A stretch of DNA of 62,916 nucleotides, filler included, from Octopus bimaculoides (Eukaryota): NCBI RefSeq assembly GCF_001194135.2. It is 7 parts of 7 records of this genome, joined end to end, with 100 filler letters (N's around TTAATTAATTAA, not from the genome) between each part and the next. Parts side by side here need not be neighbours in the genome. Positions count along the whole stretch, not along the records: positions 39,501 to 57,729 come from NC_069006.1; 6 more parts are not named here. One strand, given 5' to 3'. This document shows, piece by piece, positions 39,401 through 57,686 of the stretch. Below the pieces are notes generated by a model, which worked only from the letters and a program-made list of their open reading frames with translations, was not told where the DNA came from and searched no databases. The first letter of the stretch is position 1. Every line of letters begins with the position of its first letter. The translations under genes were made by a program, and so were the position numbers.

Positions 39401-39579
39401 NNNNNNNNNNNNNNNNNNNNNNNNNNNNNNNNNNNNNNNNNNNNTTAATTAATTAANNNNNNNNNNNNNNNNNNNNNNNNNNNNNNNNNNNNNNNNNNNN
39501 AGAGAAAGAGAGAGAGATATAGACAGACAAACAGATAGACAGATAGATAGATAGATAGGTAGATAGGTAGATAGGTAGG

Positions 39580-39622
<43 letters not shown>

Positions 39623-39687
39623 GTAGATATATAGACAGATAGGTAGATATATAGACAGATAGATAGATAGGTAGATAGGTAGATAGG

Positions 39688-39726
<39 letters not shown>

Positions 39727-40295
39727 GTAGGTAGGTAGGTAGGNNNNNNNNNNAGAAAGAGAGAGAGAGATAGACAGACAAACAGATAGACAGATAGATA
39801 GATAGATAGATAGATAGATTGGAAAATTTTGCAGGTATAGTTATTCTTTGATAAAAAAAAATCTCTTTGGCGAATTCCAATACAGAAAACCTGTTGTGTA
39901 AACCTATAAAAGTACAAATACTTGTCTGTATGTGAAAAACAGCGGATGGTTATTAGTAAACAGGATGAAGGCTTATTTGCATTGTTAGTCTGTAGAAAAA
40001 TTAATAATACGACAAATATCTGAATAATTTGTGTCGAAATGAATTTATTTGGTAGGTGTGGTTAATGATTGCGGATATAAATAGCTCGTATTGTGCTTTT
40101 ACTCAACTGTATTCCATTATTATTTGAGTAGTTTTATTAAACTGGTTATTGTTTCTTGTCCGTATATGGGTGAGTGCTGGAAGTGACAATTTGTTCCCTG
40201 AATACTGCATCATGTAGTGAGGGTTGTTGGTAGCATGTATTTTGGTGTGTGTGTGTGTATGTGTGTACATCATATATACATATATATAATATATA

Positions 40296-40336
<41 letters not shown>

Positions 40337-40797
40337 NNNNNNNNNNNNNNNNNNNNNNNNNNNNNNNNNNNNNNNNNNNNNNNNNNNNNNNNNNNNNNNN
40401 NNNNNNNNNNNNNNNNNNNNNNNNNNNNNNNNNNNNNNNNNNNNNNNNNNNNNNNNNNNNNNNNNNNNNNNNNNNNNNNNNNNNNNNNNNNNNNNNNNNN
40501 NNNNNNNNNNNNNNNNNNNNNNNNNNNNNNNNNNNNNNNNNNNNNNNNNNNNNNNNNNNNNNNNNNNNNNNNNNNNNNNNNNNNNNNNNNNNNNNNNNNN
40601 NNNNNNNNNNNNNNNNNNNNNNNNNNNNNNNNNNNNNNNNNNNNNNNNNNNNNNNNNNNNNNNNNNNNNNNNNNNNNNNNNNNNNNNNNNNNNNNNNNNN
40701 NNNNNNNNNNNNNNNNNNNNNNNNNNNNNNNNNNNNNNNNNNNNNNNNNNNNNNNNNNNNNNNNNNNNNNNNNNNNNNNNNNNNNNNNNNNNNNNNN

Positions 40798-40838
<41 letters not shown>

Positions 40839-42721
40839 ATACTCGTGTTATCTGGAAAGGGATAATGTTAAATGGACACAAGCTGGGGCTTGATTAGCCT
40901 TGACTAGATCACCCGGGTGAAGTTATCTGATTGCTGAATGCTCGAAATATCCAACGACCCCAGGAGTTTTCTCGTGTATCCAAATGCATCACAGGTCGAC
41001 GTATGGAAAAATACACATGCACGCACACACAAACATATGCATACAAGCACGCATGCCCACACATATACACATATAGTCATCAATTTTGTTTGAAACTCTT
41101 TAAAGTGCTTGTTGGAGATATAGTGAAGTTGCCAACGAAACAATGTTACATTTATATTTTATATTCCAATATTTTTGGTTGAAATGCCCTTTATCATTAG
41201 AAAATTGAGCATAGTGACGAACTGGCATCTTTTGAACAGACATATGTGAAGATGTCGCAACATACTAATCTACTTAATCTAGTTATATTCTATTTAAATA
41301 GATGAATTAATACAAATATTCTGTTTGTGAATTGTGCTTCTAGTGTAGGACCCGCTACGTTTATTGCAAGCTATTTGGTACACAACGTAAGCCTTCGTTA
41401 ATGGGACAACTGGTTAGTGTGCACATATAGGACACTAATATTGTTGCCCGTTGGACGATTCCCTCACAGAAACCTCTTTAGTGTGAGACCAGGATGTATC
41501 GTCTGTATGCTCAATCCCTTTTGCAAGGCACTTGATAGATTGCAGCAGAAATTGTGTCTTCAAAATGCTGCAGCTTTAGAAGCACCTACTATCTCTGGAG
41601 TTATGCTGGTAGATCTTGGTAAAACAAAAACGTGGGTTACTATTATCCAAAAGAGCCTTTTGGAACTCCTCAGTTCTGTTTTCAGTCCTATAATTTCCAA
41701 CTTGCTTCATAATGGCTTTCTAAAACAATTTTAACAACTCTTTTAGCAATACTTCATCCAGACACCATTACTTTTATATCATCAAGCCTGAAGCAGGTTC
41801 ACTTTTCTTTCATGTTGAATTTATATAATCTATTAGAGAAAGAAACGAGCAAAGATACACTGACGGATTACATTCTCAAAACATTGCGAGAAATATGTAA
41901 TGTATGTAAACGAAATATCTTATGCATAGTTGAAATACGTGTTGTATAGGTGAAATACGTAATGTCACCTGATACAATTCCTGTTAAGGTACAAAATGTT
42001 ATGAGATATCTATGAGGTAGCAATGGCGACAAAATACTACGACGTAATTTAAACGAAGAAACATAACAAACAAGTAAGATAGGCGCATTATGAAACTATA
42101 ACAACACGCTTCAATGTCCGCCACTTTTATTAGGGTAATCTTATCCAGGGTATGTAATATAAAAAATGAGGTCAATTTTTTGAGATTATAACGAGGTACT
42201 CAGTATTCTCAGAGAATCTTAACTAGGGTGTATATCTATTAATGTACTAATAACGTATATGAAAGACTAAAGGAGTACCTTAAATCAGAACCTGGTATAA
42301 GAAATTGTATTCTAAGCCAGGGTATACACAGATACCCCAAAAGTAAATAGACAGCCTTCTTTATACTGTTTTAGCAGTGCCGTCACTACTCATTACTATG
42401 ATGCCCAAAATATTTACTAAATATTAGATTAAGTATCTAGATTCATCAAATGACATTGTTTTGCTTCTAGAAATAAATTTTTCCAAAACGATGGTGTCTA
42501 TTTATGTACATACTTACATGTGCATATGTGGGCACAGGTTGTTACAAAACGTAAACAACAACAAAAAAATACGAAGTACGAGGACATGGAAATTGAACTT
42601 TTTTTGCGAACAACGAAAGAAACAAATGGAAAACAAGACAAACAACACAAAGAACGACCCTTCATCAGTTGTCGGCTGCTTTTCTAAACCGTATTTCGAG
42701 CATTTCACAACTATATATATA

Positions 42722-42868
42722 TAATCTGTATGTTTTCGTCTACCAAATCCACTCACAAGGCTTTGGTTGACCCGAGGCTAAAGTTGAAGGCACTTGCCCA
42801 AGGTGCCACGTAGTGGGATTGAACTCAAGAACCATGTGGTTGGGAAGCAAGCTTCTTACTCCATAACC
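42722..42868 (-). mobile_element. SINE family A 5' half abutting the left edge of the 27-bp array
   Basis: ctaccaaatccactcacaaggctttggttgacccgaggcta...cacttgcccaaggtgccacgtagtggg. Confidence 0.8.
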
Positions 42869-42869
42869 A

Positions 42870-45800
42870 CGACTTCAGTACTTCAATATTTCCTCTGACC
42901 ATGAGCAGCTCATTATAACCCCTGACCTCTAGTACCTCATTAAAATCCCTAGCCTTGGATACTTCATCATAACTGATGGGTTTGGCTATGTTACTATCAC
43001 TTTTGGTCTGTATTCAAAATAATGTAGTATTTTGTGTACCTCAGTACAGCTACTGACCTTTCAGTACCTCACTATAATGTCTGGCCTCGAGTCCTTTACT
43101 ATAGCTATCGACCTTCAGTACCACATTATAAAATCTGATCTCGAGCAACTAACTATAACTACTGGCCTTGAGTACTTCACTATCTTCTTTGACTCTGAGC
43201 ACCTCAACAGGTACTTTCAGTACCTTACTCTACCTCCTAGCCTTAGCATTTCAATATAATATTTCAACTTGGGTACCTCACTATAAACTCATACTGTGTA
43301 ACTCGCTATAACTTGATAGACTCAGTAAAACCTCTGGCCGCGATTGACTCGTCTTAATCTCTGACTTTCAGTGACTCATTAGAACTTTTGGCCCTGAGTG
43401 ATTCCTTGTGACCTCAGGCCTTGAATGCTTCCGCATAACTCCTGACCTTCAATGATTCATTATAACCTCTGGCCTTGAGTACTTCACTATCTTCTCTGCC
43501 CCTGAGCACCTCAATATAAACCATGACCTTAAGTACTTCACTATATCTGCTGGCTTTAGTACTTCAATACAATCTCTTAACTTGGGTACCTCACCCTAAA
43601 CTCTGACATTGAGTACCTTCGCTATAATCTCTGGCCTTGAGTACCACACTAAAATCCCTGGCCATGAGTACCTCATTATGTGTCCTGATCTCGTGTAACT
43701 AACTATAACTACTGACCTTGAGTACCTCACTATCTTCTCTGACCAAAGGTACCTGTATATAAGCCGTGAGCTTCAGTTCTTACCCATAAAACTACTGACC
43801 CTCAGTACATCATTATAACCCCTTGTCTGGAGTACCAAACAATATAATAGCTGACCTTCAGAATCTCATTATATTCTCTGCTGTTGCTGAGACTCAGAAC
43901 GTCCATATAAATGCTGGCGTTCGAGGTTTCAATGTATACCCTTGCTGTTAACGCGTTATTAAAACCCTTGTTTTCAGAACCTCAGGATGTTGCCCCTAAC
44001 TATGAGTACTTCGAATTAACCTCCGACCTTGAGTACATTATAATAACCTTAGGCCATGGTTATATCACTAAAACTTCTAGATTTGTGCATTTTACTATAA
44101 CTTCCCTTGTTGAGTGTAACAGTATAACTGTGGGCCTTTAGTGTCTTACAAGGATTTCTGATCTTGAGTATCTTAATACCTCTGGCCTTAAGCATGTCAA
44201 CATACAACCAGGCTTTGAGTGCCTCACTATAACCTCTGACTTTCAGTACTTTATTCTAAATGCTGGCCTTGAGTAACATGTCACAACCCCTGGCTTTGAT
44301 AGACTCAGTAAAACCTCTGGCCGCGATTGACTCGTCTTAATCTCTGACTTTGAGTGACTCATTAGAACTTTTGGTCCTGAATGATTCCTTGTGACCCCAG
44401 GCCTTGAATACTTCCGCATAACTTCTGAACTTTAATGATTCATCATAACCTCTGGCCTTGAGTGAATCATCATGATATCTGGCCTTCAATGACGCATTAT
44501 AACCTCTATTTTTGAGTGACTCATTATAACCACTGGCCTTGAGTACCTCCGTATAACCTCTGGCCTTGAGTGACTCGTCATAATATCTGGCCTTCAGTGA
44601 CTCACTATAATCTCTAGCCTTGAGTGGCTCATTACAACCTCTGGCTTTCAGTGACTCTTTATAACCTCTGGCCTTGTGTACCTCTCTATAACCTTTGGTC
44701 TTCAATGACACATTATATCCTCTGGCTTTGGGTGACTCGTTATAACCTCTGGCCTTGAGTGACTCTTTATATATCCGCTGGCCTTGAGTACATCTGTATG
44801 ACCTCTGGTCCTCAGTGACTCATTATAACCTCTGGCTTTGGGTGACTTGTTATAATCTCTGGCCTTGAGTGACTCGTCATAATATCTGGCCTTGTGTGAT
44901 TCATTATAACCTCTAGCCTCGAGTGACTCATTATTACCTCTAGCCTTGAGTGACTCATTATAACTTCTAGCCTCGAGTGACTCATTATAACCTCTAGCCT
45001 TGAGTGACTCATTATAACCTCTAGCCTCTAGCTTTTAGTACCTCAGCATAACCTCTGGCCTTGTGTACTTCTCTACAACCTTTGGGTGACTCGTTATAAC
45101 CTCTGGCCTTGAGTGACTCTTTATATCCGCTGGCCTTGAGTACATCTGTATGATCTCTGGTCTTCAGTGACTCGTTATAACCTCTGGCTTTGGTTGACTT
45201 GCTATAATCTCTGGCCTTGAGTGATTCTTTATGTCCGCTGGCCTTGAGCATCTCAGTATAACCTCTGGCCTTGAATGACTCGTCATAATATCTGGCCTTG
45301 AGTGACTCATAACCTCCGTCCTTGAGTACTTCCGTATAAGCTCGGGCCTTCAGTGGCTCATCATAACCTCTAGCCTTCAGTGACTCGTTATAACCTCTGG
45401 CCTTGAGTGACTCGTCATAATATCTAGCCTTCAGTGAATCATTATAACCTCAAGCCTTGAGTGACACATTATAACCTCTGGACTTGAGTACCTCAGCATA
45501 ACCTCTGGCCTTGAAGACTTCATTATGAAGTCTGGCCTTGAGCATCACATCAAACTCTCTGACCTAGAGTACTTCATTATAATATCTGGCCTTGAGTGGC
45601 ACATTGAAACCTCTGGCCTCGAGGACTTCACTCTAACCTTTGGTCTTGAGTACCTCCAGCTTTGATTATCTATTTTAAAACATCTGGCCTTGAATGTCTC
45701 ATTAATAGGTTTGGCCTCGAACAGCTTAGCATAATCTCTGACTTTAAATACCATAACCTCTGGCCTCGAGTACTACTTTATGAACTGTGGACTTGAGTAC

Positions 45801-48800
45801 CTCATTGTAAGGTCTAGCTTTGACTATCACAATTTACTATCGGAGCTGGAGTCCTTCAGTATAATATCAGGCCTTGAGTTCCTTACAATTATCTCTGATC
45901 TGGAGAACGTAACTTTAAACTTTAGTTTGATACCTTATCATAACTTGTGGTAATGAAAAACTAATCAGAATCCCTGACCTTCAATGCCATACGATATACT
46001 TCTGGCCTTCAGTACCCTGTGAAAATATCTGGTATTGCATACTTCACTATAACTTCTGGTTTGTGTACTTTGTTTAAGACTGGCATCGAGTACTGCATTA
46101 TAAGTTTGGCTTTGAATATCTCACTGCAACTCCTGGCTTTGAGTTACTCACTTTAAGTTTTGATCAAGAACTCTTTACCAAAACCTCTGGGCATGTTTAC
46201 CGTAATAAAATCTCAGTCCTTGAGTACCTCATTTTAAGGTACTCAAGTACCTTGAGAACCTCAGAACATTCGTGCATCACTATAAGATCTGGCCTCAAGA
46301 ACTTATTATAAGTTTTGATTCGGAGTACTTCATTTTAACCTCTGGCTTTGAGTACCTCAATTTCAGCTCTGTTTTTGGGACTTTATTTTAAGCTCTGGCC
46401 TTGAGTATTTCAGTTTCAGCTCTGGCCTTGAGTACCTCAATTGTAGCTCTGGCTGTAAGTACCTCATCTTAAGTTCTGTTTTTGAGACTTTATTTTAAGC
46501 CTTGGCTTTGAATACTTTATTTAACGCCCTGGCCTGGAATATTTCAATTTCAGTTCTGACTTTGAGTACCACATCTTACTTTGAACTTGGACACCATATG
46601 AAACGCTCTTATTCTAATGACAACAGTATAAGGTCAGGCCTTGGAGACCGCTTTATAAACTCTGGCCTTGAGTACTTCATTATAAGCTCTGGCTTGGAGT
46701 ATCACCTTATAATCTCTAGCCGTGAGTACTCAACTAAAATAACTGGTCTTGAGTACCTTACATTAACATCTGGCTTTGAACACCATGCCCTAAACTCCGT
46801 TTGATTACCTCACTATAGCCTTGTTTACCTCAGTATAAGTTCTGGCTTTGAGTACCTCATTTTAAGAACAGGATCTCAGTAACTTCTGGCTGTGAAGACC
46901 TCAGTATAAGCACAAACATTGACTACTTCATTTTAGTCTCTGACTTTGAGTACCTCGTTTTAAGCTCTGGCCTCGAGTACCTTAGTATAACCGCTGGCCT
47001 TGAAAACTTCAATTTAAGATCTGGTCTGTATAAGGTCTGGTTTTGGATACTACATTATACTTCTTAACTTAAATACTCCTTTATAACCACTGGTCAATAA
47101 CTTTATAAACTCTGGCATGTAGTACCTCATTATACGCCCTGGCTTTCAATACTACATTGTATCCTCCGGCTTTAATATCTGGACTTGAATATCTCACTAT
47201 AATATCTGGCCTTGAGTATCTCAGTTGCCACTAACCATGTGAATTTCGCTCCCGAGTACCTCATCATAACTTTTAACCTTGAGTATCTCATTAAAGCGCC
47301 CAGCCTTGAATATTTCATTATAATCTCTGGTATGAGTACCTCATTAAAAGGTTTAGTCTTGAGTGCCAATTTGTAAGCTCTGGCCATGAGTACCTCATTT
47401 CAAGCTTAGACTTTGAGTACAGTACGTTACCTCACTTCGACCCCTGCACTTGAGTATTCCAAGTAATGAAGCACTCAAGTGTAAAGTCTACACTTGAGTA
47501 CCTCATTAGAGACTTTGAGTTGGAGCACCTTACTGTATTATCCGTCTTCAGTATTTCACTATAACGTCTAGCTTTGAGTACTTCACTCCAGCTCTTGGCC
47601 TTGCATTTTTCATTATAACTTATGATCTTGAGTATTTCTTTAAAATGTCTGGCTTTCAGTACCCCACTATATCCTTTCACTTTGAGTACCTTATTAACAA
47701 CTCTGCCTTGAGGACCTGGTTATAACTGCTGCTTTTGAGTACCTCAGTATAGTAGTCTTGAGTGGCTCAGTTTAAAATATAAGTTTGAGTACTAGACTTC
47801 TGACCTTGAGTGACTCAGCATAACTTCTGGCCTCGAGTGACTCATAATAATCTCAGGCCTTGAGTAACTCGTTATAATCTCTGACTTTGAGCGACCCATT
47901 ATAATCTCTGGCCTTGAGTACCTATGTATAACCTCTGGCCTTGAGTGACTCATCATAACCTCTGTCTTTGAGTGACACACTATAAGCTCCGGCCTTGATA
48001 GACTCCGTATAACATCTGGCCTTGAGTGACTCATAAAAACCTCAGTGATTCGGCATAACCTCTGACTTAAATACCTCTATATAGCCTCTGGCTTTGAGTG
48101 ATTCGTTATAATCACTATCTTTAAGTGACTCATTAAAAGATCTGTTTTTGAGTAACTCCTTATAATCCGTGGCTTTGAGTGGCTCCTTATAACCTCTGGC
48201 CTTGAGTGACTCGTCATAACCTCTGGCCTTGCGTACCTCCATATAACATCTGTCTGAGTAACTCATTATAATCGCTGCTCTTAAGCGACTCATTAAAGCC
48301 TCTGGCTTTGAGTGACTCCTTATAACCCCTGGCATTAAGTACCACTTTATTACCGCTGGTTTTGAGTAGCTCCGTAGAGCCTATGGCTTTGAGTGACTCG
48401 TTATAACCTCTGGCTTTGAGTATCTACGTATAACCTCTGGCTTTCAATGGCTCATTATAAACTTTGACCTTGAGTGACACGTCATAACCTCTGGCTTTGT
48501 GTTCCTTCATACAGAATTTGCCCTTGAGTGTTTCATAACCTCTGGTCTTGAGTAACTTATTATAACCTCTGGCCTTGAGTGACTCATTATTATCTCCGGC
48601 GTTAGTGACTTGTTAAAACATCTGGCCTTGAATAACTCGTCACAACTTCTGACTTTGAGTATCTCCATACAACCTCTGGCTTTGAGTGACTCGTCATAAT
48701 CTCTAGCCTTGAGTGAGTCATTAGAATATTTGTCTTTGAGTGACTTATTACCTGGGACCTTGAGTACCTCCGTATAACCTCTGGCCTTGAATGATTCACT

Positions 48801-49340
48801 ATAATCTCTGGCTTTGAGTAACTTATTATAAACCCAGACCTTGGGCAACTCAATATTATCTCCGGTGTTGAGTGACTCCTTGAAACATCTGGCTTTGAGC
48901 GACTCATCATAATCTGATTCATTATAACCTCTGGCCTTGAGTGACTCATTATAAATTCCTGTCCTAAGTATGATATTATAAGTTGAGTTTTTCAGTAGCT
49001 CATTATAACCTCTGGCCTTGAGTGACTCATTACAACCTCCGGCCTTGAGTGACCCATCATATGTTCTTGTTCTTAATAAAACATTATTAGCTCGATCTTT
49101 GAGTACGTCATTATAAAGGATGGCCTTGAGTACCTCACATTAACCTCTAGTTAGGTATACTTTTAGATCATTTCTGGCCTCGAGTATATCAATATAATAT
49201 CTTGCCTTCAGTGACTCATTTACCTTCTGACATTAAATATGTCATTGTTATCTCAAGGCTTGATTATCTCCAGGATTTTAATCTGCTTCTGAGCACCTCA
49301 TTATAGTTTCTGATCTCACATAATCCTTTAACTCTATCTT
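42870..49340. repeat. degenerate 27-bp tandem array 1 (main block, roughly 240 units)
   Basis: Plus-strand unit GAGTGACTCATTATAACCTCTGGCCTT, or variant GAGTACCTCACTATAACCTCTGGCCTT. The cleanest run is 44900-45025. It produces the 9-aa periodic ORFs KARGYNESL and MSHSRPEVI. Confidence 0.9.
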
Positions 49341-49877
49341 TAGATATCTCCCTGTCCTCTTCGGCCTTTTGTCTGTGTCTTTAACCCCCATTCACCGCCC
49401 TCCTTGATCACGTTTACAGATACGTCGGGTCCCCGGTACCGCTCTTTACTTGGGAGGTAAAAAAAAGAACAGTAATCATAACGTCGCACTGAAGGTCGAA
49501 GGTTAAAAAAACAGTAGGCCGGATGTTATCTCGAGCGACTGACAACAGCAAACTCAAACATTATATTAAGCTACACAAGATCTGAGATTGTAATAAGGCA
49601 TTCAAGAGATTTTAATAAGGTATTTTCTAAACTCTAGCTTTACATATCTTACTAAAGAACCTGGCATTGTATTCCCCAGTTGCAAATTCTATGGTTTTAT
49701 GTGGCTCATGTAGTTTTGGGCTTTCGATATCTTGCTCTAATGTCTAGCCTTGGCTGCCCTTTTTTAAGTATGAGGCATTGGTACACTATTGTATTGTTAG
49801 GCTTCGTTACCCTAATACAATATCATGTTTTTCGATGCCATACTAAATTAGGGCCTCGTTAATATTTTCTAGCTCTA

Positions 49878-50040
49878 AGGTGGCGAGCCGGCAGAATCGT
49901 TGGCATGCAGGGCAAAATGCTTAGCGGAATTTCGTCCGTCATTAATTTCTGAGTTTAAATTGCGCCGCACTTGACCTTAGCTTTCATCTTTTCAGGGTCG
50001 ATAAATTAGGTACCAGTTGTGCACCAGGGTCGACGTAACG
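49878..50040 (+). mobile_element. SINE family B
   Basis: aaggtggcgagccggcagaatcgttggc...aaaatgcttagcgg...ggtcgataaattaggtaccagtt. Confidence 0.8.
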
Positions 50041-50054
50041 CTTTCGATAAATGC

Positions 50055-50620
50055 CTTCTGTTTTAGCCTCCGGCTGACCAAAGATCTGTGAGTGAATTTG
50101 GTTGACGAAACTGAAAGAAGCCCATATATATATATATATATATANNNNNNNNNNNNNNNNNNNNNNNNNNNNNNNNNNNNNNNNNNNNNNNNNNNNNNNN
50201 NNNNNNNNNNNNNNNNNNNNNNNNNNNNNNNNNNNNNNNNNNNNNNNNNNNNNNNNNNNNNNNNNNNNNNNNNNNNNNNNNNNNNNNNNNNNNNNNNNNN
50301 NNNNNNNNNNNNNNNNNNNNNNNNNNNNNNNNNNNNNNNNNNNNNNNNNNNNNNNNNNNNNNNNNNNNNNNNNNNNNNNNNNNNNNNNNNNNNNNNNNNN
50401 NNNNNNNNNNNNNNTATTTTACTTATTTCAGTTATTTGACTGCAGCCATGCTGGAACACCGCATTGCAGGGTTTGAATCGAGTAAATCGATACCAGGACT
50501 TTTTAAACCCTGGTACTTACTCTATCATTCTCTTTTGCTGAACTGCTAAGTTTGTGGGACGTAAACATACCAACATCGGTTGTCAAGCGGTGATGGGAGA
50601 GACGAACACAGACACAAAGA
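50055..50620. mobile_element. two SINE A halves in opposite orientation separated by a (TA)n gap (plus 50055-50125; minus 50415-50620)
   Basis: Homology to 34665-35085. Confidence 0.7.
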
Positions 50621-50824
50621 CCCCCCCCCATATATATATATACCCTCTTCCTTTGAACCAAGTTTTCTTCCATAGAACCGGCCGGATCCAGACTTTACAT
50701 GTATAAGTGAGTAAAACCTAATATAGCTGGAACCCTGACAGGTGGGACTACTCTGGGTCAGAACAGACATGAGAACAATAATGGTTACAAGGCGGTTCCA
50801 CATTTCTCGAAACACTGGTACTCT

Positions 50825-51830
50825 CTAATCTGCGTATAACTTCTGGCCTTGAGTGACTCATGAGCTCTGACTTTAAGTACCTCTTTATAATCTCTGGCTT
50901 TGAGTACCTACATACAGACTTTGGCTTTGAGTGACATAGTAATACCTCTGGCCTTGGGTGGCTCATTATAAACCCTGGCCTTGAGTATCTGCGTACAACT
51001 TCTGGCCTTGAGTAAGTCATTATAACCTCTGGCCTTAAGTAGCTCTTTACAACTCCTGGCTTCGTGTACCTTCATACAGACTTTGGCTTTGAGTGAGTCA
51101 TTATACCGTCTGGACTTGAGTATCTGCGTATAAACTCAGGCCTTGATAGAGTCATTATGATCTCTGGCCTTGACTATCTGCGTATAACCTCTGGCCTGGA
51201 GTGGCTCATAATAAACTCTGGTCTTAAGTAACTTATTATAACATCTGACCTTGAGTATCTACCGATGGCCTCAGGCCTTGACTGACTCATCATTACCTAT
51301 GGTTTTGGCTAACACACTATAACCTCTGACCTTGATAGAGTCATTATAACCCTTGGCCTTGACGGACTCGTTATAACGCCTGGATTTGAGTTCCTCCATA
51401 CAACCTTAGGCTTTGAGTGACTTATTATACCCTCTGGCCTTGAGTATCTGCTTATAACATTTGGCTTTGAGTGACTCACCATAACACCTGACCTTCATTG
51501 ACTCATCATAACCTCTGATTTTGAGTAACATACCATAACCTCTGGCCTTGATAGAGTGCTTATAACCTCTGGCCTTGTGTGACTCGTCATAACTTCTGGC
51601 CTTGTATACCTTCATACAGACTTTAGTTTTGAGTGACTCATTAAAGCCTCTGGCCTTCAGTGACTTATTATAACGCCTGGCTTTGAGTATCTACGCATAA
51701 CCTCAGGCGTTGAGTGATTCATCATAACCTCTGCCCATGTGTACTTCTAGTCTTGATAAACTCAGTATTATCACTGGCCTTGAGTGACTCGTCATAACCG
51801 CTGCCCATGTGTACCTCCATATAGCTCTCA
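50825..51830. repeat. 27-bp tandem array 1, right block (roughly 37 units)
   Basis: Same unit and orientation as 42870-49340. Confidence 0.9.
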
Positions 51831-51889
51831 AGTAAAGACACCTCAACTGAAAGCAGTTTAAAGACATGCCCAGAAAATTAGTGAGATAT

Positions 51890-54800
51890 AGAATGGGACA
51901 TTGGGTGCCAACCTATATAGTGGTACAGAGAAGGTCAAACACTGAAGTCGGACAGTCGAAGTCTGACACCATAGAAGGAAAGTCAAGGTCAGATACATAT
52001 TGAGACAGTCAACATTAGACATTACAGTGGGGCAGTGAAGGTCGGACACTATAGTAGAACAGTCAAGGTCAGATTTCATAGTGGGTCGGTCAAGGCCAGG
52101 CATTATAGTGGGACAGTCATGCTCAGACGCTACAGTCAGACAATCATGGTCAGACACTACAGTGGGAAAATAAATGCCACACACTATAATAGGACAATCA
52201 AGGTCAGACACTATAGTGGGACCGTCAAGGTCAGACATTATAGTGGGACAGTCAAGGCCAGACATTATAACTGGACAGTCATAATCAGACGCTACAATGG
52301 GACAGTGAACGTCAAATACTATAGTAAGACAGTCAAGGGCTAACACTATAGTGGGACACACAACATTAGACATAGTAGAACAGTCAAGGTCAGACACCAT
52401 TGTGGGTCAGTCAAGGCAAAACATTACAGTGGGACAGTCAAGGCCAGACGTTATAGTGGGACAGTCATGATCAGACGCTACAACGGGACAGTCATGATCA
52501 GACACTACAGTGAACGCGAGACACTATAGTAGGACAGTCAAGACCAGATATTATAGTTGGACAGTCAAGGTCAGGCCGCTACAATGAGACAGTCATGATC
52601 AGACACTACAATGGGACAGACACTACGACGTAATATTCAAAGCCAGACTCTAGTTCTACAGAGGGACAGTCAAGTCCAGGCATAACAATGGGACAGTAAA
52701 GGCTAGATATCATAGTAGGACATTCAAGGTCAGACACTACAATGAGGCAGTCAAGGCTAGAGACTATAGGGAGGCAGTAAAGGTTAGATGTCATTGTGGG
52801 GACAGTCAAGGTCAGGAAAGATAGTGGGACAGTCAAGGCTACGTATTATAGTAGGTCAAAGAAGGTTAGATTTATAGTGGGAAGTTCAAGGTCATACACC
52901 GCAGAAGGACAGGCAAGGCCAGACCTTACAGAGGAACAGTCAACGTCAGACGATACATTCGCACAGTGAATGTCAGACACTATACTGGGACAGTTAAAGT
53001 GAATCATCAGACTGGGACAGTCGAGGTCAGGCATTATAGTGGTCAGTGAAGCTCAGACATTACAGTGGGAAAGTCAAGATCAGAAACTACAGTGGTGTAG
53101 TCAATGCCAGATATTATAGTGGGACAGTCATAGTCAGACACTACAGTGGGACAGCCAAGGCCAGACACAATAGTGGGATAGTCAAGGTTAGACATTTTAG
53201 TAGGACAGTCAAATTAAGACTCTATAGTGGTACAGTCAAGGTCAGTCACCACAGTGGGACAGTGAGGGCCAGATATTATAGTGGAGCACTCAAGGGGAGA
53301 CACTGCAGTGGGATAGTCAAGGTCAGACACAACAGTTAGATAGTGAAGGACAGACATTATAGTGGGACAGTCATGGTTGGACATTGTAGTGGGACAGTCA
53401 AAGCTATACACTACAGTGGCACAAACAAGGCGTGACATTATAGTAGGAAAATCATGGTCAGGCGCAACAGTAGAACAGTCAAGGTCATACGTTATGGTGA
53501 GACAGTTTAGGTCAGACATCATAGTAGGACAGTCAAAGCCAGACATTATTATACTGCGACACTAAAGATCAGTTACTACAGTGGGACAGCCAAAGTCAGA
53601 CATTTTAGGAAGGCAGTCAAGGTCAGGGAATACAGTGGGACAGTGAAGGTCAGACTGTGTAGTGGGGAATTCAAAGCGAGAAATCATAATGGGAGACACA
53701 AGGCCAGGCATTACAGTGGGACAGTCAAGGCCAGACACTATAGAGGAATAGTGAGTGAATGGCAAGCGCTACCGTGGGACATTCAAGGCCAGCCATTATA
53801 GCGGGACGGTCGTGGCCAGACGTTATAGTGGGACAGTCAGTGCGAGAAATTGCAGTGGGATACTTAAGGTAACACACTGCCATGGAACATTCAAATCGTG
53901 GGATAGTCACGTAAAATACTGTAATGAGTCAGTTAATGTCTGAGACTATAATAGGTCAGTCACCGTGAGACATTATATTGTGAAAGTCAAGGTCAGATAA
54001 TATAGTGGGACAGTGAAGGTCAAACACTACTGTGCGAGTTTCAAGGCTAGGAAATATGATGGGACAGTGAAGGCCAGCTACTACAATGCGAGAGCCAAGA
54101 CTGGATATTGTTGTGAAAGTCTGAAACACTAGTCGAGCAATCAAGGCTGGACTTTATAGTGGGACAGTCAAGGTCAGACATAATAGTTGCACTTGGAAAG
54201 TTAGACACGGTAGTGAGACAGTCAAGGTCAGATAACATGTTGGGAGAGTCAAGGTCAGATTTTAAAATGCGACAGTCAAAATCAGACACTACAGTGGGAC
54301 GTCAAGGTCAGACACTATAGTGGGACAGTCAAGGTCAGATACTATAGAGGGATAGTCAAGTTCAGATGCTACAGAAGAACAATCATGGTCAGACAGAATC
54401 CTATGACAGTCAAGGTCATATACTATAGTGGAACAGTGAAGGCCAGGCATTAGAGTTCTACTATCATGGTCAGACACTATAGTGGTCTATGAATGTCAGA
54501 CACTATAGAGGAACGACCAAGGTCTGATTCTCTAGTCGTATAGTCAAGATCAAACCCTATAGTGGGACGGTCTAGGTCAGACACTATAAATGAGACAGTC
54601 AGAGCAAGACACTCTAGTGGTATGCTCAAGGACAGATACTACGTTAATGGTAGACACTTTAGTGACACAATCAAAACGAGACGTTACAGCGGGTGGTCAA
54701 AGTCTGGCATTACATTGAGATAGTCGAAGTAAGACATTATAGTAAGGTAGTGCCAGTGACACTCTATTGTTGAATACTGACTTTCAGATGTAATGTCACT

Positions 54801-56070
54801 GCAAAGGTCACACACAACTTTGGGAGTGTGAAGGTTAGGACAGGAGTTTGAAAGTTGGAAATTTGGGAGAGAGAAGGTCGGAGCAGTGAAGGACATACGT
54901 CATAGTGGAAAGCTGAAGTTCAGCTATTATAATCTAACAATAACGGTAAGACACTGCAACGGGATAGGAAATGTCAGACATTTTAATCTGACACACACGC
55001 ACTGCAATATACATATACATGTACACACACATTCATTCAGACGCACAAACAAGCGCTTACACAATCATGTACTCACACACATACACAGGGACGGCATTGG
55101 TTACAGCTTATAGGAGGTTTTGAAGGACAGACATTAAAGATGGACTGTCAAAGTCAGCCATTATAAAGAGAAAGTGAAGCATAGACGCTCTAGTGATAGA
55201 ATGAAGATCAATCATAGCAGACGGGCGGTGAAGGTAGGGCACTGTAATGAAAGAATCAAGGTCAGATGTTATATGGGACAGTGAAGAACAGACACAAGAG
55301 CGTGATATTCATGGTCAGATACTAGAAAGAGAAATATTTCAGCGAGAGGATCAAGGTAAAATATTATAGTGAGGCAAGGAGGATGAGACACCATTGTGCG
55401 ACAGCCAAGTTCAGACACTATTATTGTGGGACAGTCATTGTCAAACAATATAGTGAAACAGTCAAAGTCACAGATTACAGTGGGGCTGTCAAGATCAGAC
55501 GAAATAGAGTGAAGGTCAGTCATAGTAGACGAGGAAGGGTACTGTAGTGGGAGGATCAAGGTTAGACATTGTGACGGGCTGCTGAACGCTAGGTAGAGTA
55601 GTGGGACAATGAAGGTTAGACACTACAGTGAGATATCCAAAGTCAGACACTGAAGTGATGCGGTAAAGGTGAGACACTTTAGTGAGAGAGTCAAGGTCAA
55701 ATATTATAATAGTTTGGTGAAGGTCAGACATTGTAGTGAGGCAATGAAGGTCAGACACTACAGTAGGGGCGTGAATGACATACACTATAGAGGGACAGTC
55801 AAAGTCAGACACTAGAGCGAGCCAATCATAAAATGAGACTAGAATGAGAGTCAAGGTCAGAGGGTAGAGTGAGAGTGTTATGGTCAGACACTAGCGTGAG
55901 GCAATCAAGGTCAGATACTTTCGTGAAACAATGGAGTAATGTATTACAGTGGTCACCTAGTGACACCAGACATTCTAGTGTAACATCTAAGGCCAGACAA
56001 TTATGACACTGAAGGTAAGACATTATTGATTGGCTGTCAATGTCAGGCATTACAGAGTGATAGTGACCAA
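51890..56070. repeat. degenerate 27-bp tandem array 2 (roughly 150 units), inverted relative to array 1
   Basis: Plus-strand unit AAGGTCAGACACTATAGTGGGACAGTC; ORFs KVRHYSGTV (+) and SDLDCPTIV (-). Interrupted by (CA)-rich sequence at ~54980-55090. Confidence 0.9.
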
Positions 56071-56074
56071 TGAC

Positions 56075-56350
56075 GTCCCGCTGTGTGTGTGTGTGTGTTG
56101 GGCCCTTTCGCCGAACCGCTAAGTTACGGGGACGTAAACAAACCAACACCGGTTGTAAAGTGATGGGGTGGGACAAGCAAATACGTGCGCGCGCGCACAC
56201 ACATGAGAGGCTTCTTTCAGTTTCTGCATTCCAAATCCACTCACAGGGCTACAGTAGAAGACATTTGCCCGAGATGCCACGCAGTGAGACTGAACCTGAA
56301 ACTTCTTCCCGCACAGTCGGGTCGCAGACATCTTGCCGCACAGTCACTCC
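56075..56350 (-). mobile_element. SINE family A abutting the right edge of array 2
   Basis: ccgaaccgctaagttacggggacgtaaacaaaccaacaccggttg...ggcttctttcagtt...gtagaagacatttgcccgagatgccacgcagtg. Confidence 0.8.
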
Positions 56351-56662
56351 TGCACCTACAGATACACATTACCACAACATATCATATAACTAATTCCACC
56401 ATTGCTGGAAATAAATGATATTAAGTTGAATGCAATATGGAAGACGTTTAGTAAGTAATTACACATGTAAATCTGTTGGTATTAGTTTCTCTAAACGAAA
56501 AAGAAATGATTCTTACAAAGACCGTACAGGAAAAGAGTAATTTCAAGGACCGGATATGCACCAAAATGCCTTGAATGGAGAGTGTAGTTAAGTGTAGACA
56601 AGTCTAATAAAGATGAAAATGTGAGGGTCACGCTCACATACACATACATTATGCATGTATAT

Positions 56663-56721
<59 letters not shown>

Positions 56722-57139
56722 GTCCATACAAATATGTAGATAAATTGACAGACAAGCACATAGGCAGACAGGGAGCTTGATAGATAAATNNNNNNNNNNN
56801 NNNNNNNNNNNNNNNNNNNNNNNNNNNNNNNNNNNNNNNNNNNNNNNNNNNNNNNNNNNNNNNNNNNNNNNNNNNNNNNNNNNNNNNNNNNNNNNNNNNN
56901 NNNNNNNNNNNNNNNNNNNNNNNNNNNNNNNNNNNNNNNNNNNNNNNNNNNNNNNNNNNNNNNNNNNNNNNNNNNNNNNNNNNNNNNNNNNNNNNNNNNN
57001 NNNNNNNNNNNNNNNNNNNNNNNNNNNNNNNNNNNNNNNNNNNNNNNNNNNNNNNNNNNNNNNNNNNNNNNNNNNNNNNNNNNNNNNNNNNNNNNNNTAT
57101 ATATATATATATATATATATATAGTACCTTAGTACTTAT

Positions 57140-57350
57140 ATTTGTAAAGCCTTGTACCTATTCTATGGGTCTCTTTTGCCGAATCATTAAGTTACGGGGA
57201 CATAAACACACCAACACCGGTTTCAAACGATGGTAGGAGACAAACACAGACAAAAAGACACACACATACACACAAATCCACACACACATATACGTTTTGT
57301 TTTTCAGTTTCCCGTCTACCAAATCTACTCACAAGGGTTTGGCCGGCCCG
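57140..57350 (-). mobile_element. SINE family A fragment
   Basis: ctattctatgggtctcttttgccgaatcattaagttacggggac...ccgtctaccaaatctactcacaagg. Confidence 0.75.
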
Positions 57351-57686
57351 ATATATTCTCTCTCCATACGGTGAAGATGATGATGATGACGATGATGATG
57401 ACGATGACGATGATGATGACGATGATGATGACGATGACGATGGTGATGATGACGATGATGACGCTGCTGCTGCTGCTGCTGGTGATTACGACAACAACGA
57501 CGAAGATTCATAGTTTTGTGGTTATAAAGGTAGGTGCATTTGTAACGGCTTGAATCGAATGTAGTTTATTGGTGGATTAGCGACTCTCGGTAGGGATTTG
57601 AACTCAGAGCGTAAAGTGATGTAATACTAATAGGTATTACATCCCAGCGCTGACATCAAAAGAATGAGACATAAAGCAGTATTCGG

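What the first reader, a model, noticed from the sequence alone, without database searches (positions are those of the whole stretch)
42870..56070. 13-kb back-to-back complex of two related 27-bp tandem arrays (foldback-like architecture)
Seen: array 1 read on the minus strand (AAGGCCAGAGGTTATAATGAGTCACTC) and array 2 on the plus strand (AAGGTCAGACACTATAGTGGGACAGTC) share period 27 and 19/27 consensus positions, point away from each other, and meet within ~60-100 bp at ~51830-51900. Each arm has homogenised to its own consensus. I do not recognise the family. Established: Drosophila FB and sea-urchin TU foldback transposons have long inverted arms made of short tandem repeats. Inference: either a giant foldback-like element, an old inversion within a satellite followed by independent concerted evolution, or a divergent pair of repeat-protein genes.
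Basis: partly seen in the sequence, partly recalled or inferred. Interest (0 to 1): 0.8.

Follow-up and report, generated by a model that had tools for sequence, protein, structure and literature searches.

The report
Old 27-bp minisatellite with strand switch
This is a real but ordinary 13-kb block of decayed, non-coding 27-bp tandem repeats whose two halves point in opposite directions; it is not a foldback transposon and not a pair of repeat-protein genes.

Summary
About 440 copies of a 27-bp unit fill 42875-56050. They read on the minus strand up to ~51830 (consensus AAGGCCAGAGGTTATAATGAGTCACTC) and on the plus strand from ~51831 (AAGGTCAGACACTATAGTGGGACAGTC). The two consensuses share 19/27 positions in one register only (shuffle P ~1.5e-4), so they are two subfamilies of one repeat.

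The interpretations fare differently.
- Coding is rejected. Every frame has stops, 78% of length changes are not multiples of 3, stops are not avoided, there is no codon periodicity, and no true protein relatives were found.
- A foldback transposon is not supported. The arms are not mirror images, the longest inverted match is 71 nt at 70-78%, the outer ends share no terminal inverted domain, and the arm consensuses differ at 8 fixed positions.

The best reading is an old, decayed minisatellite. It acquired a head-to-head strand switch by inversion or inverted duplication. Arm-specific variants were then amplified, and SINE-like elements inserted later.

The gap at 50145-50414 lies in a SINE-like/(AT)n insert, not in the array, and the junction does not depend on it.

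No eukaryotic genome could be searched, so copy number elsewhere is unknown. Interest is low.

The parts
42875..44200 (-). Arm 1, outermost block: degenerate 27-mers. Block consensus AAGGTCAGAGGTTATAGTGAGTTACTC; many copies end in GAGGTACTC.
   Evidence: 50 monomers, 70% identity to their own consensus. Consensus matches c1 at 24/27 and c2 at 20/27. Positions 5 and 17 are intermediate between the two arm types.
44200..45700 (-). Arm 1, best-preserved block of the c1 type (AAGGCCAGAGGTTATAATGAGTCACTC).
   Evidence: 56 monomers at 82% identity to consensus. TRF reports 53 copies. Local segmental duplications: 45218..45110 vs 44866..44756 at 93%, and 44459..44324 vs 43476..43341 at 91%.
45700..47800 (-). 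Arm 1, degenerate block.
   Evidence: 81 monomers at 69% identity to their own consensus. Lag-27 autocorrelation is 0.41-0.57.
47800..49130 (-). Arm 1, second well-preserved c1-type block.
   Evidence: 51 monomers at 79% identity; consensus identical to c1.
49130..49870 (-). Arm 1, decayed tail. It includes a ~165-bp patch (49465-49630) that reads as c1-like monomers on the PLUS strand, a probable small local inversion.
   Evidence: Wrap-alignment scores exceed the maximum of 300 shuffles (18): c1- signal at 49100-49414 and 49640-49864, c1+ signal 24-34 at 49460-49684. The patch monomers match c1 at 16-19/27. This is weak evidence.
49880..50834 (.). Insert that interrupts arm 1: SINE-like fragments in opposite orientations, with (AT)n runs and the assembly gap 50145-50414.
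   Evidence: 50086-50122 matches the reverse complement of 56209-56246 at 87%. 50532-50587 matches 56105-56160 at 84%. The sequence was read. There is no 27-bp signal here.
50835..51830 (-). Arm 1b: c1-type 27-mers next to the junction.
   Evidence: 39 monomers at 76% identity; consensus 27/27 identical to c1.
51808..51930 (.). Head-to-head junction (strand switch). The last arm-1 monomer ends at ~51808-51830; degenerate arm-2 monomers begin at ~51831. There is no unique spacer.
   Evidence: Sliding wrap-alignment switches from c1- to c2+ between windows 51781 and 51808. Monomer table. There are no Ns nearby. The diagnostic positions switch abruptly at this point.
51831..54700 (+). Arm 2, inner part: c2-type 27-mers (AAGGTCAGACACTATAGTGGGACAGTC).
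   Evidence: Blocks at 79% and 75% identity to consensus. TRF reports 71.6 copies for 51916-53839.
54700..56050 (+). Arm 2, outer degenerate part.
   Evidence: 50 monomers at 68% identity to c2. The c1 state at position 20 rises to 31-43%.
42690..42870 (+). SINE-like fragment just outside the left outer end of the array.
   Evidence: 42737-42766 matches 57313-57342 at 93%. Sequence read.
56085..56360 (+). SINE-like element next to the right outer end of the array, preceded by (GT)n.
   Evidence: 56099-56154 matches 57166-57222 at 86%. 56105-56160 matches 50532-50587 at 84%. Sequence read.

Best explanation
This is a single, isolated locus of an old non-coding 27-bp minisatellite in an animal genome. 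From memory of the flanking SINEs the genome is probably a cephalopod (octopus); no tool confirmed this.

Inferred history: an ancestral 27-bp array grew by replication slippage and unequal exchange. One rearrangement, either an inversion with a breakpoint inside the array or a fold-back inverted duplication, placed two parts head to head at ~51830. Different monomer variants were then amplified in each part: the c1 type in blocks 44200-45700, 47800-49130 and 50835-51830, and the c2 type in 51831-54700. Amplification then stopped and all copies decayed by point mutations and 1-bp indels. SINE-like elements inserted into the array and lie at or beside its edges.

Shown: the anatomy, the relatedness of the two units, the strand switch, the absence of coding constraint, and the absence of foldback-transposon hallmarks.

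Inferred: the order of events, the rearrangement mechanism, and the lack of function.
For: Anatomy and relatedness:
- Period-27 arrays with uniform orientation in each arm and an abrupt switch at ~51830. Skew reverses at the same place.
- The consensuses share 19/27 in register, P ~1.5e-4.
- Between-arm monomer identity is 0.49, far above the ~0.26 expected by chance and below the 0.59 found within arms.

Decay without ongoing homogenisation:
- Identity to own consensus is 68-82%.
- Monomer identity does not fall with distance and there is no higher-order repeat. Only a few local 5-6-monomer duplications at 91-93% were found.

Layering:
- Well-preserved c1 blocks alternate with degenerate blocks.
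- The outermost blocks are slightly intermediate at the diagnostic positions.

Later insertions:
- SINE-like copies interrupt the array at 49880-50834. One lies at its right edge and a fragment lies beside its left edge.

Non-coding:
- Stops in all frames.
- 92 of 118 length-changed monomers are not multiples of 3.
- Stop counts match column-shuffled expectation, |z| <= 2.6 and about 1.3 or less in the frames the consensus leaves open.
- No codon-position periodicity, P = 0.92 and 0.10.
- No Pfam family above cut-off. No real protein relatives.

Precedent: diverged satellite arrays are known to accumulate mutations, inversion breakpoints (strand switches) and TE insertions with age (bioRxiv 10.1101/2021.07.12.452052, read).
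Against: - No eukaryotic genome collection was available. I could not test whether the 27-mers occur elsewhere, alone or as inverted pairs, or whether the locus is conserved in related species.
- The rearrangement mechanism is not resolved: inversion and inverted duplication predict the same present-day picture.
- A chimeric assembly join at ~51830 cannot be excluded without reads.
- The consensus contains TCAAGGYCA, a nuclear-receptor-type half-site. I recognised it from memory; it occurs 80 times. A binding-site-array function is therefore not formally excluded.
Confidence: 0.75

Rival explanations
1. Relic of a giant foldback-type (FB/TU/Tetris/Galileo-like) DNA transposon. Its two long inverted arms consist of 27-bp subrepeats and meet at a very short middle domain.
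For: Two arrays of a related 27-bp unit lie in inverted orientation with almost no spacer. Foldback elements do have inverted arms built of tandem subrepeats and usually lack ORFs (PMC4079207).
Against: - The arms are not inverted copies of each other. There is no mirrored colinearity: z < 3 among hundreds of diagonals.
- The longest inverted matches are 71 nt at 70-78% and lie at scattered positions. None of 12 nt or more lies within 51500-52250.
- The outer ends share no terminal domain: local score 17, against a mean of 26 for random arm-by-arm windows.
- The arm consensuses differ at 8 positions, each at 52-96% frequency. Neutral decay of once-identical arms would leave the two consensuses equal.
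- Arm lengths are very unequal (~8 kb vs 4.2 kb).
- No transposase-like ORF or Pfam hit inside or beside the arrays.
- No target-site duplication can be defined.
Confidence: 0.07
2. The head-to-head junction at ~51830 is an assembly chimera that joins two separate arrays of related minisatellite subfamilies. Alternatively, the scaffold join at the gap 50145-50414 is wrong.
For: - The assembly is gapped, with four N runs in 18 kb.
- The region is highly repetitive.
- The monomer type changes abruptly at the junction with no gradient.
Against: - The junction lies on uninterrupted sequence 1.4 kb from the nearest gap.
- Monomers are 20-30% diverged from one another, so most k-mers are unique and assemble normally.
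- The arms are not a perfect palindrome, which is what fold-back library or missed-adapter artefacts produce.
- All three long gaps adjoin (AT)n runs, not 27-mers.
- If only the gap join were wrong, the junction would still stand, with 1.0 kb of c1-type array beside 4.2 kb of c2-type array.
Confidence: 0.1
3. Two divergently oriented genes, or recent pseudogenes, that encode proteins with 9-residue repeats: (K-A-R-G-Y-N-E-S-L)n on the minus strand and (K-V-R-H-Y-S-G-T-V)n on the plus strand.
For: - 27 bp equals 9 codons.
- Each consensus has stop-free frames, which gives open stretches of up to 210 codons.
- In the shared frame several differences between the arms are conservative (N/S, S/T, L/V, A/V). 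This is read directly from the two consensuses.
Against: - Over whole arms every frame has 61-211 stops.
- 78% of monomer length changes break the frame.
- Stop counts equal column-shuffled expectation, and there is no third-position excess of variation.
- No Pfam hit.
- Two word-indexed searches of 5.8 billion proteins found nothing.
- The exhaustive search of 1.84 billion representatives returned only unrelated low-complexity 8-9-residue repeat proteins. The DNA repeats of two of them are unrelated to these 27-mers, 15/27 or less.
Confidence: 0.03
4. A functional array of DNA-binding sites. One version is ~80 monomeric nuclear-receptor half-sites (TCAAGGYCA) spaced every 27 bp in two divergent blocks. 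Another is 9 x 3-bp modules for a tandem zinc-finger protein. Either could act as a regulatory or heterochromatin-nucleating element.
For: - YCAAGGYCA occurs 50 times on the minus strand of arm 1 and 30 times on the plus strand of arm 2, with none in the flanks.
- This 11-column window is the best-conserved window in both arms.
- Only one of the eight arm-specific differences falls in it, and that change keeps the motif.
Against: - The excess conservation of the core is marginal: 0.80 vs 0.74 and 0.79 vs 0.75.
- Column conservation in the two arms correlates weakly, r = 0.16.
- The array as a whole is decaying at roughly neutral-looking rates, with TE insertions.
- The motif identity rests on memory, and any 27-mer contains some known motif.
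Confidence: 0.03

Closest known systems
Diverged (decayed) satellite or minisatellite arrays with inversion breakpoints ('strand switches') and TE insertions, as catalogued in complete human centromere maps (bioRxiv 10.1101/2021.07.12.452052)
   Same: - Tandem array of one repeat family, split into blocks of opposite orientation.
- Blocks of different subfamily and age ('layers').
- Accumulated point mutations.
- Retroelement insertions inside the array.
- No coding capacity.
   Different: - The unit is 27 bp, not 171 bp or a 5-bp-derived unit.
- The locus is only 13 kb and sits between non-satellite flanks, so it is a minisatellite-scale interspersed locus and not a centromeric megabase array.
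- Chromosomal location is unknown.
Foldback transposons (Drosophila FB, sea-urchin TU, D. virilis Tetris, Galileo). Defining features were taken from PMC4079207; details of FB and TU are from memory.
   Same: Inverted arms composed of short tandem subrepeats, a very short middle region, and no ORF.
   Different: - The arms are not sequence-level inverted repeats. Monomer identity between arms is 49%, the consensuses match at 70%, and there is no mirrored order.
- There is no shared terminal domain and no definable target-site duplication.
- The arm lengths are unequal.
- Evidence for multiple copies could not be obtained.
Large genomic palindromes or inverted duplications formed by fold-back repair or template switching (general knowledge, from memory)
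   Same: Head-to-head arrangement with essentially no spacer. A fold-back inverted duplication of an array end would produce exactly this geometry in one step.
   Different: The present arms have lost all mirror symmetry and carry different consensus variants. If this was the origin, it is very old and has been overwritten by arm-specific amplification. It cannot be distinguished from a simple inversion.

Membership tests
Foldback (FB-like) DNA transposons | Long terminal inverted repeats: the two arms are reverse complements of each other | tested here: not met
   No mirrored colinearity. The longest inverted matches are 71 nt at 70-78% and are scattered. None of 12 nt or more lies across the junction. 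Between-arm monomer identity is 0.49.
Foldback (FB-like) DNA transposons | Arms contain tandem subrepeats | tested here: met
   There are 284 and 157 copies of a 27-bp unit.
Foldback (FB-like) DNA transposons | Conserved terminal (flanking) domain at both outer ends, in inverted orientation | tested here: not met
   42780-43000 against the reverse complement of 55950-56130 gives a best local score of 17 (an 11-nt match). That is below the mean of 26 for random arm-by-arm windows.
Foldback (FB-like) DNA transposons | Target-site duplication of 8-10 bp flanking the element | tested here: inconclusive
   The right outer end runs into (GT)n and a SINE-like repeat, and only a fragment-level SINE match lies just outside the left end. 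The original insertion borders, if there were any, are not identifiable. The sequences immediately outside the array show no obvious direct repeat.
Foldback (FB-like) DNA transposons | Multiple dispersed copies in the genome, with or without an autonomous partner encoding a transposase | not testable with these tools
   No eukaryotic genome collection is on hand. Pattern scans of metagenome, prokaryote and viral collections gave only chance matches. There is no transposase-like ORF in the piece.
Tandem-repeat (minisatellite/satellite) DNA | Head-to-tail copies of a unit with significant periodicity | tested here: met
   TRF. Lag-27 autocorrelation is 0.4-0.7 against 0.27 background.
Tandem-repeat (minisatellite/satellite) DNA | No protein-coding constraint on the repeats | tested here: met
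   and the protein searches.
Tandem-repeat (minisatellite/satellite) DNA | Signs of unequal exchange or segmental amplification within the array | tested here: met
   Local duplications of 5-6 monomers at 91-93% identity. Alternating well-preserved and degenerate blocks.
Repeat-protein gene (9-residue repeats) | An open reading frame maintained across the array | tested here: not met
   There are 61-211 stops per frame over whole arms, and the longest open stretch is 210 codons.
Repeat-protein gene (9-residue repeats) | Homologous proteins elsewhere | tested here: not met
   Searches found none. The hits are unrelated low-complexity repeats.

The most novel reading that the evidence does not exclude
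The locus is the decayed remnant of a very large fold-back inverted duplication, or of a foldback-type mobile element, built from a 27-bp unit whose conserved core is a monomeric nuclear-receptor half-site (TCAAGGYCA). Related loci would then recur in the genome as inverted pairs. That would define a new cephalopod repeat or transposon family with possible regulatory or heterochromatin-nucleating activity.
Probability: 0.06. Interest if true: 0.55.

Novelty: new member of a known kind. Interest (0 to 1): 0.18.

Why it matters
It matters little by itself. The locus is a clean example of how an old minisatellite records its history: a strand switch, layered amplification of variants, decay, and retroelement insertions. 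It also warns that inverted arrays of a shared short unit need not be foldback transposons. If the source genome holds many such paired arrays, the family would deserve a library entry for repeat masking, and possibly a second look as a mobile element.

Tried and rejected
1. Protein homology for translated arms. Two word-indexed searches gave nothing. The exhaustive phmmer search gave 70 hits with E down to 6e-19. Inspection showed unrelated proteins with 8-9-residue low-complexity repeats, for example a lysyl-tRNA synthetase tail and TPR-like repeats.
   - The two most similar-looking hits (P0022 NESLKTYCS, P0041 KARCYTAPL) are anonymous ENA metagenome ORFs.
   - Their 27-bp DNA units match c1 at 15/27 or less, within chance after selection.

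2. DNA pattern scans with a sparse dimer pattern of 22 specified bases, which matches the piece 10 times. Metagenome, prokaryotic genome and viral collections gave 2, 1 and 0 hits. All hits are unrelated 2-3-copy or 13-bp repeats.

3. Taxon confirmation. A search with an ORF translated through the SINE-like repeat found nothing. A literature search for three SINE strings found nothing. 'Octopus' therefore remains my recollection only.

4. Rfam and tRNA scans gave only sub-threshold hits on CA/TA microsatellites.

5. A third, plus-oriented array remnant left of arm 1 (42100-42350) was suspected by eye. It is not significant: score 2 against a 99th-percentile null of 8.

6. A higher-order repeat structure, suggested by the TRF periods 54, 81 and 108, was not found. 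There is no regular lag signal in monomer space.

7. A mirror-symmetric palindrome was tested and rejected.

8. Flanking ORFs gave no Pfam hits above cut-off.

9. Literature searches for cephalopod or octopus satellites and minisatellites found no description of a 27-bp family. The O. vulgaris repeat annotation paper does not itemise tandem repeats.
Full report
OBSERVATION.

Tandem Repeats Finder reports period-27 arrays, with overlapping rows at 54, 81 and 108, at 43032-49131, 50835-51744 and 51916-55919. Lag-27 autocorrelation in 300-bp windows is 0.4-0.7 from about 42850 to 49200 and from 50900 to 56000. Lags 26 and 28 stay at the ~0.27 background.

- AAGGCCAGAGGTTATAATGAGTCACTC (c1) for 44200-45700, 47800-49130 and 50835-51830;
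- AAGGTCAGACACTATAGTGGGACAGTC (c2) for all three blocks of the right arm.

The two share 19/27 positions in register 0 and in the same reading direction only; the next best of the 54 rotation/strand combinations gives 12. The chance of 19 or more is 1.5e-4 by shuffling and 1.2e-4 analytically.

PWM scans show that orientation is strictly uniform within each arm and that the family occurs nowhere else in the piece. GC and AT skew change sign at 51.8-52.0 kb.

THE GAP.

The N run at 50145-50414 is not inside the 27-mer array. The array decays from 49130 to about 49870. Then comes a stretch without 27-bp signal. It consists of fragments of a dispersed SINE-like repeat in both orientations, with (AT)n runs:
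- 50086-50122 matches the reverse complement of 56209-56246 at 87%;
- 50532-50587 matches 56105-56160 at 84%.

The array resumes at 50835 with a consensus identical to c1. All three long gaps of the piece are bordered by (AT)n/(TA)n, so they are microsatellite assembly failures.

No reading frame is at stake. The join of arm 1a to arm 1b is plausible, since type and orientation agree, but it is unverified. The head-to-head junction lies 1.4 kb to the right of the gap, on uninterrupted sequence, and does not depend on it.

ANATOMY.

Arm 1 is layered. Two well-preserved c1 blocks (44200-45700 at 82% identity to consensus; 47800-49130 at 79%) alternate with degenerate blocks (42875-44200 at 70%; 45700-47800 at 69%). 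In the degenerate blocks many copies end in GAGGTACTC instead of GAGTCACTC. Arm 2 is best preserved near the junction (79%) and decays outward to 68%.

Mean pairwise monomer identity is 0.59 within each arm and 0.49 between arms. Identity between monomers does not fall with distance, and there is no regular higher-order repeat. Only a few local duplications of 5-6 monomers at 91-93% identity were found. Homogenisation therefore stopped long ago.

At the eight positions that distinguish c1 from c2, the states switch abruptly at the junction with no gradient. The outermost blocks of both arms are slightly intermediate: T at position 5 and G at position 17 in outer arm 1, and A at position 20 in outer arm 2.

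The junction is at ~51830. What looked like a 60-100-bp spacer reads as degenerate arm-2 monomers at 16-18/27. Inside the decayed tail of arm 1, a ~165-bp patch (49465-49630) scores as c1-like on the plus strand, above the maximum of 300 shuffles. It is probably a second, small inversion, but the evidence is weak.

On the right, the array runs into a (GT)n run followed by a SINE-like repeat at about 56085-56360. On the left, a short SINE-like fragment lies just outside it at about 42690-42870. Beyond these there is no 27-bp signal.

IS IT CODING? No.

- The consensus sequences leave two frames (c1) or three frames (c2) free of stops. That alone explains open stretches of up to 210 codons.
- Over whole arms every frame carries 61-211 stops.
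- Of 118 monomers with a changed length, 92 change by a non-multiple of 3.
- Stop counts equal those of column-shuffled monomers, |z| <= 2.6 and about 1.3 or less in the open frames.
- Variability shows no codon-position pattern, P = 0.92 and 0.10.
- No Pfam family passes its cut-off.
- Word-indexed searches with an arm-1 ORF and an arm-2 ORF found nothing.
- The exhaustive search of 1.84 billion representatives returned 70 hits. They are unrelated proteins with 8-9-residue low-complexity repeats.
- The DNA behind the two most similar-looking hits has unrelated 27-bp units, matching c1 at 15/27 or less.

IS IT A FOLDBACK TRANSPOSON? The evidence says no.

Foldback elements have arms that are true terminal inverted repeats, with a terminal domain, tandem subrepeats and an inner domain. 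They also have a middle domain, 8-10-bp target-site duplications, and several copies per genome (PMC4079207). Here only the 'tandem subrepeats' feature is met.

- The arms show no mirrored order: z < 3 over hundreds of diagonals, and the best 6-monomer runs are within noise.
- The longest inverted matches are 71 nt at 70-78% and lie at unrelated distances from the centre.
- No inverted match of 12 nt or more exists within 51500-52250.
- The outer ends share no inverted terminal domain.
- Neutral decay of two once-identical arms would leave their consensuses equal. Here they differ at eight positions, each held by 52-96% of copies. Arm-specific amplification must therefore have taken place.
- No transposase-like ORF is present.
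- Target-site duplications cannot be assessed. The right edge runs into (GT)n and a SINE-like repeat, and the left border is not identifiable.
- Copy number elsewhere could not be tested.

BEST EXPLANATION (confidence 0.75).

This is an old non-coding minisatellite. It suffered a head-to-head strand switch, through an inversion with a breakpoint in the array or a fold-back inverted duplication; the two cannot be told apart now. Different variants were then amplified in each arm. Turnover stopped, the copies decayed, and SINE-like elements inserted.

I recognise the SINE-like repeats from memory as the tRNA-derived SINEs of octopus genomes. Nothing confirmed this. If the genome is an octopus, a rough age can be given using the calibration quoted in PMC13282606 (JC 0.09 ~ 25 My, JC 0.2 ~ 56 My). 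The 18-32% divergence from consensus corresponds to JC 0.21-0.42, roughly 60-115 My. This is an order-of-magnitude figure that assumes neutrality.

RIVALS.

- Assembly chimera at the junction (0.10). It cannot be excluded without reads. It is disfavoured because the junction lies on contiguous sequence of well-diverged monomers and is not a perfect palindrome.
- Foldback relic (0.07).
- Repeat-protein genes (0.03).
- Binding-site array (0.03). The best-conserved 11 columns in both arms spell TCAAGGYCAGA, which contains the extended half-site of monomeric nuclear receptors (from memory). It occurs 80 times, strand-specifically in each arm. However, the core is only marginally better conserved than the rest, and column conservation correlates weakly between arms, r = 0.16.

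LIMITS.

No eukaryotic genome collection was available. Sparse-pattern scans of metagenome, prokaryote and viral collections gave only chance matches. Literature searches found no description of a 27-bp cephalopod repeat.

VERDICT.

Biologically it is an ordinary decayed minisatellite with a strand switch: a new member of a known kind, of low interest.

Noticed in passing
window 42690-42870, 49880-50122, 50416-50640, 56099-56360, 57166-57350: Five copies or fragments of one dispersed SINE-like repeat with an internal (AT)n/(CA)n microsatellite. Short matched segments of 30-57 nt between them are 84-93% identical. From memory they resemble the tRNA-derived SINEs of octopus genomes. A protein search and a literature string search did not confirm this.
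   Followed up: partly
window 40337-40797, 50145-50414, 56790-57097: All three long assembly gaps of the piece are bordered by (AT)n/(TA)n runs. They look like microsatellite assembly failures and not structural breaks.
   Followed up: yes
window 49465-49630: A short patch inside the minus-oriented arm reads as 5-6 c1-like monomers on the plus strand, at 16-19/27. Its wrap-alignment score of 24-34 compares with a shuffle maximum of 18. It is possibly a small second inversion.
   Followed up: partly
window 42875-56050 (monomer positions 26-27 and 1-9): The best-conserved part of the unit in both arms is TCAAGGYCAGA. It contains the extended half-site of monomeric nuclear receptors (NR5A/FTZ-F1, ERR; from memory). 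There are 50 exact YCAAGGYCA on the minus strand of arm 1, 30 on the plus strand of arm 2, and none in the flanks. Conservation of this core is only marginally above the rest of the unit.
   Followed up: partly
window 43341-43476 vs 44324-44459; 44756-44866 vs 45110-45218: Local segmental duplications of 5-6 monomers at 91-93% identity within arm 1. They are much younger than the bulk of the array.
   Followed up: yes
window 39533-39819; 57372-57463: An (AGAT)n microsatellite of ~72 copies, and a (GATGATGATGAC)-type 30-bp repeat next to another SINE-like copy.
   Followed up: no
window 56631-56700, 40998-41070, 40235-40332: Rfam mir-297, mir-466 and mir-3149 matches at 26-45 bits, against gathering scores of 85-100. 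They fall on CA/TA microsatellites and are artefacts.
   Followed up: yes
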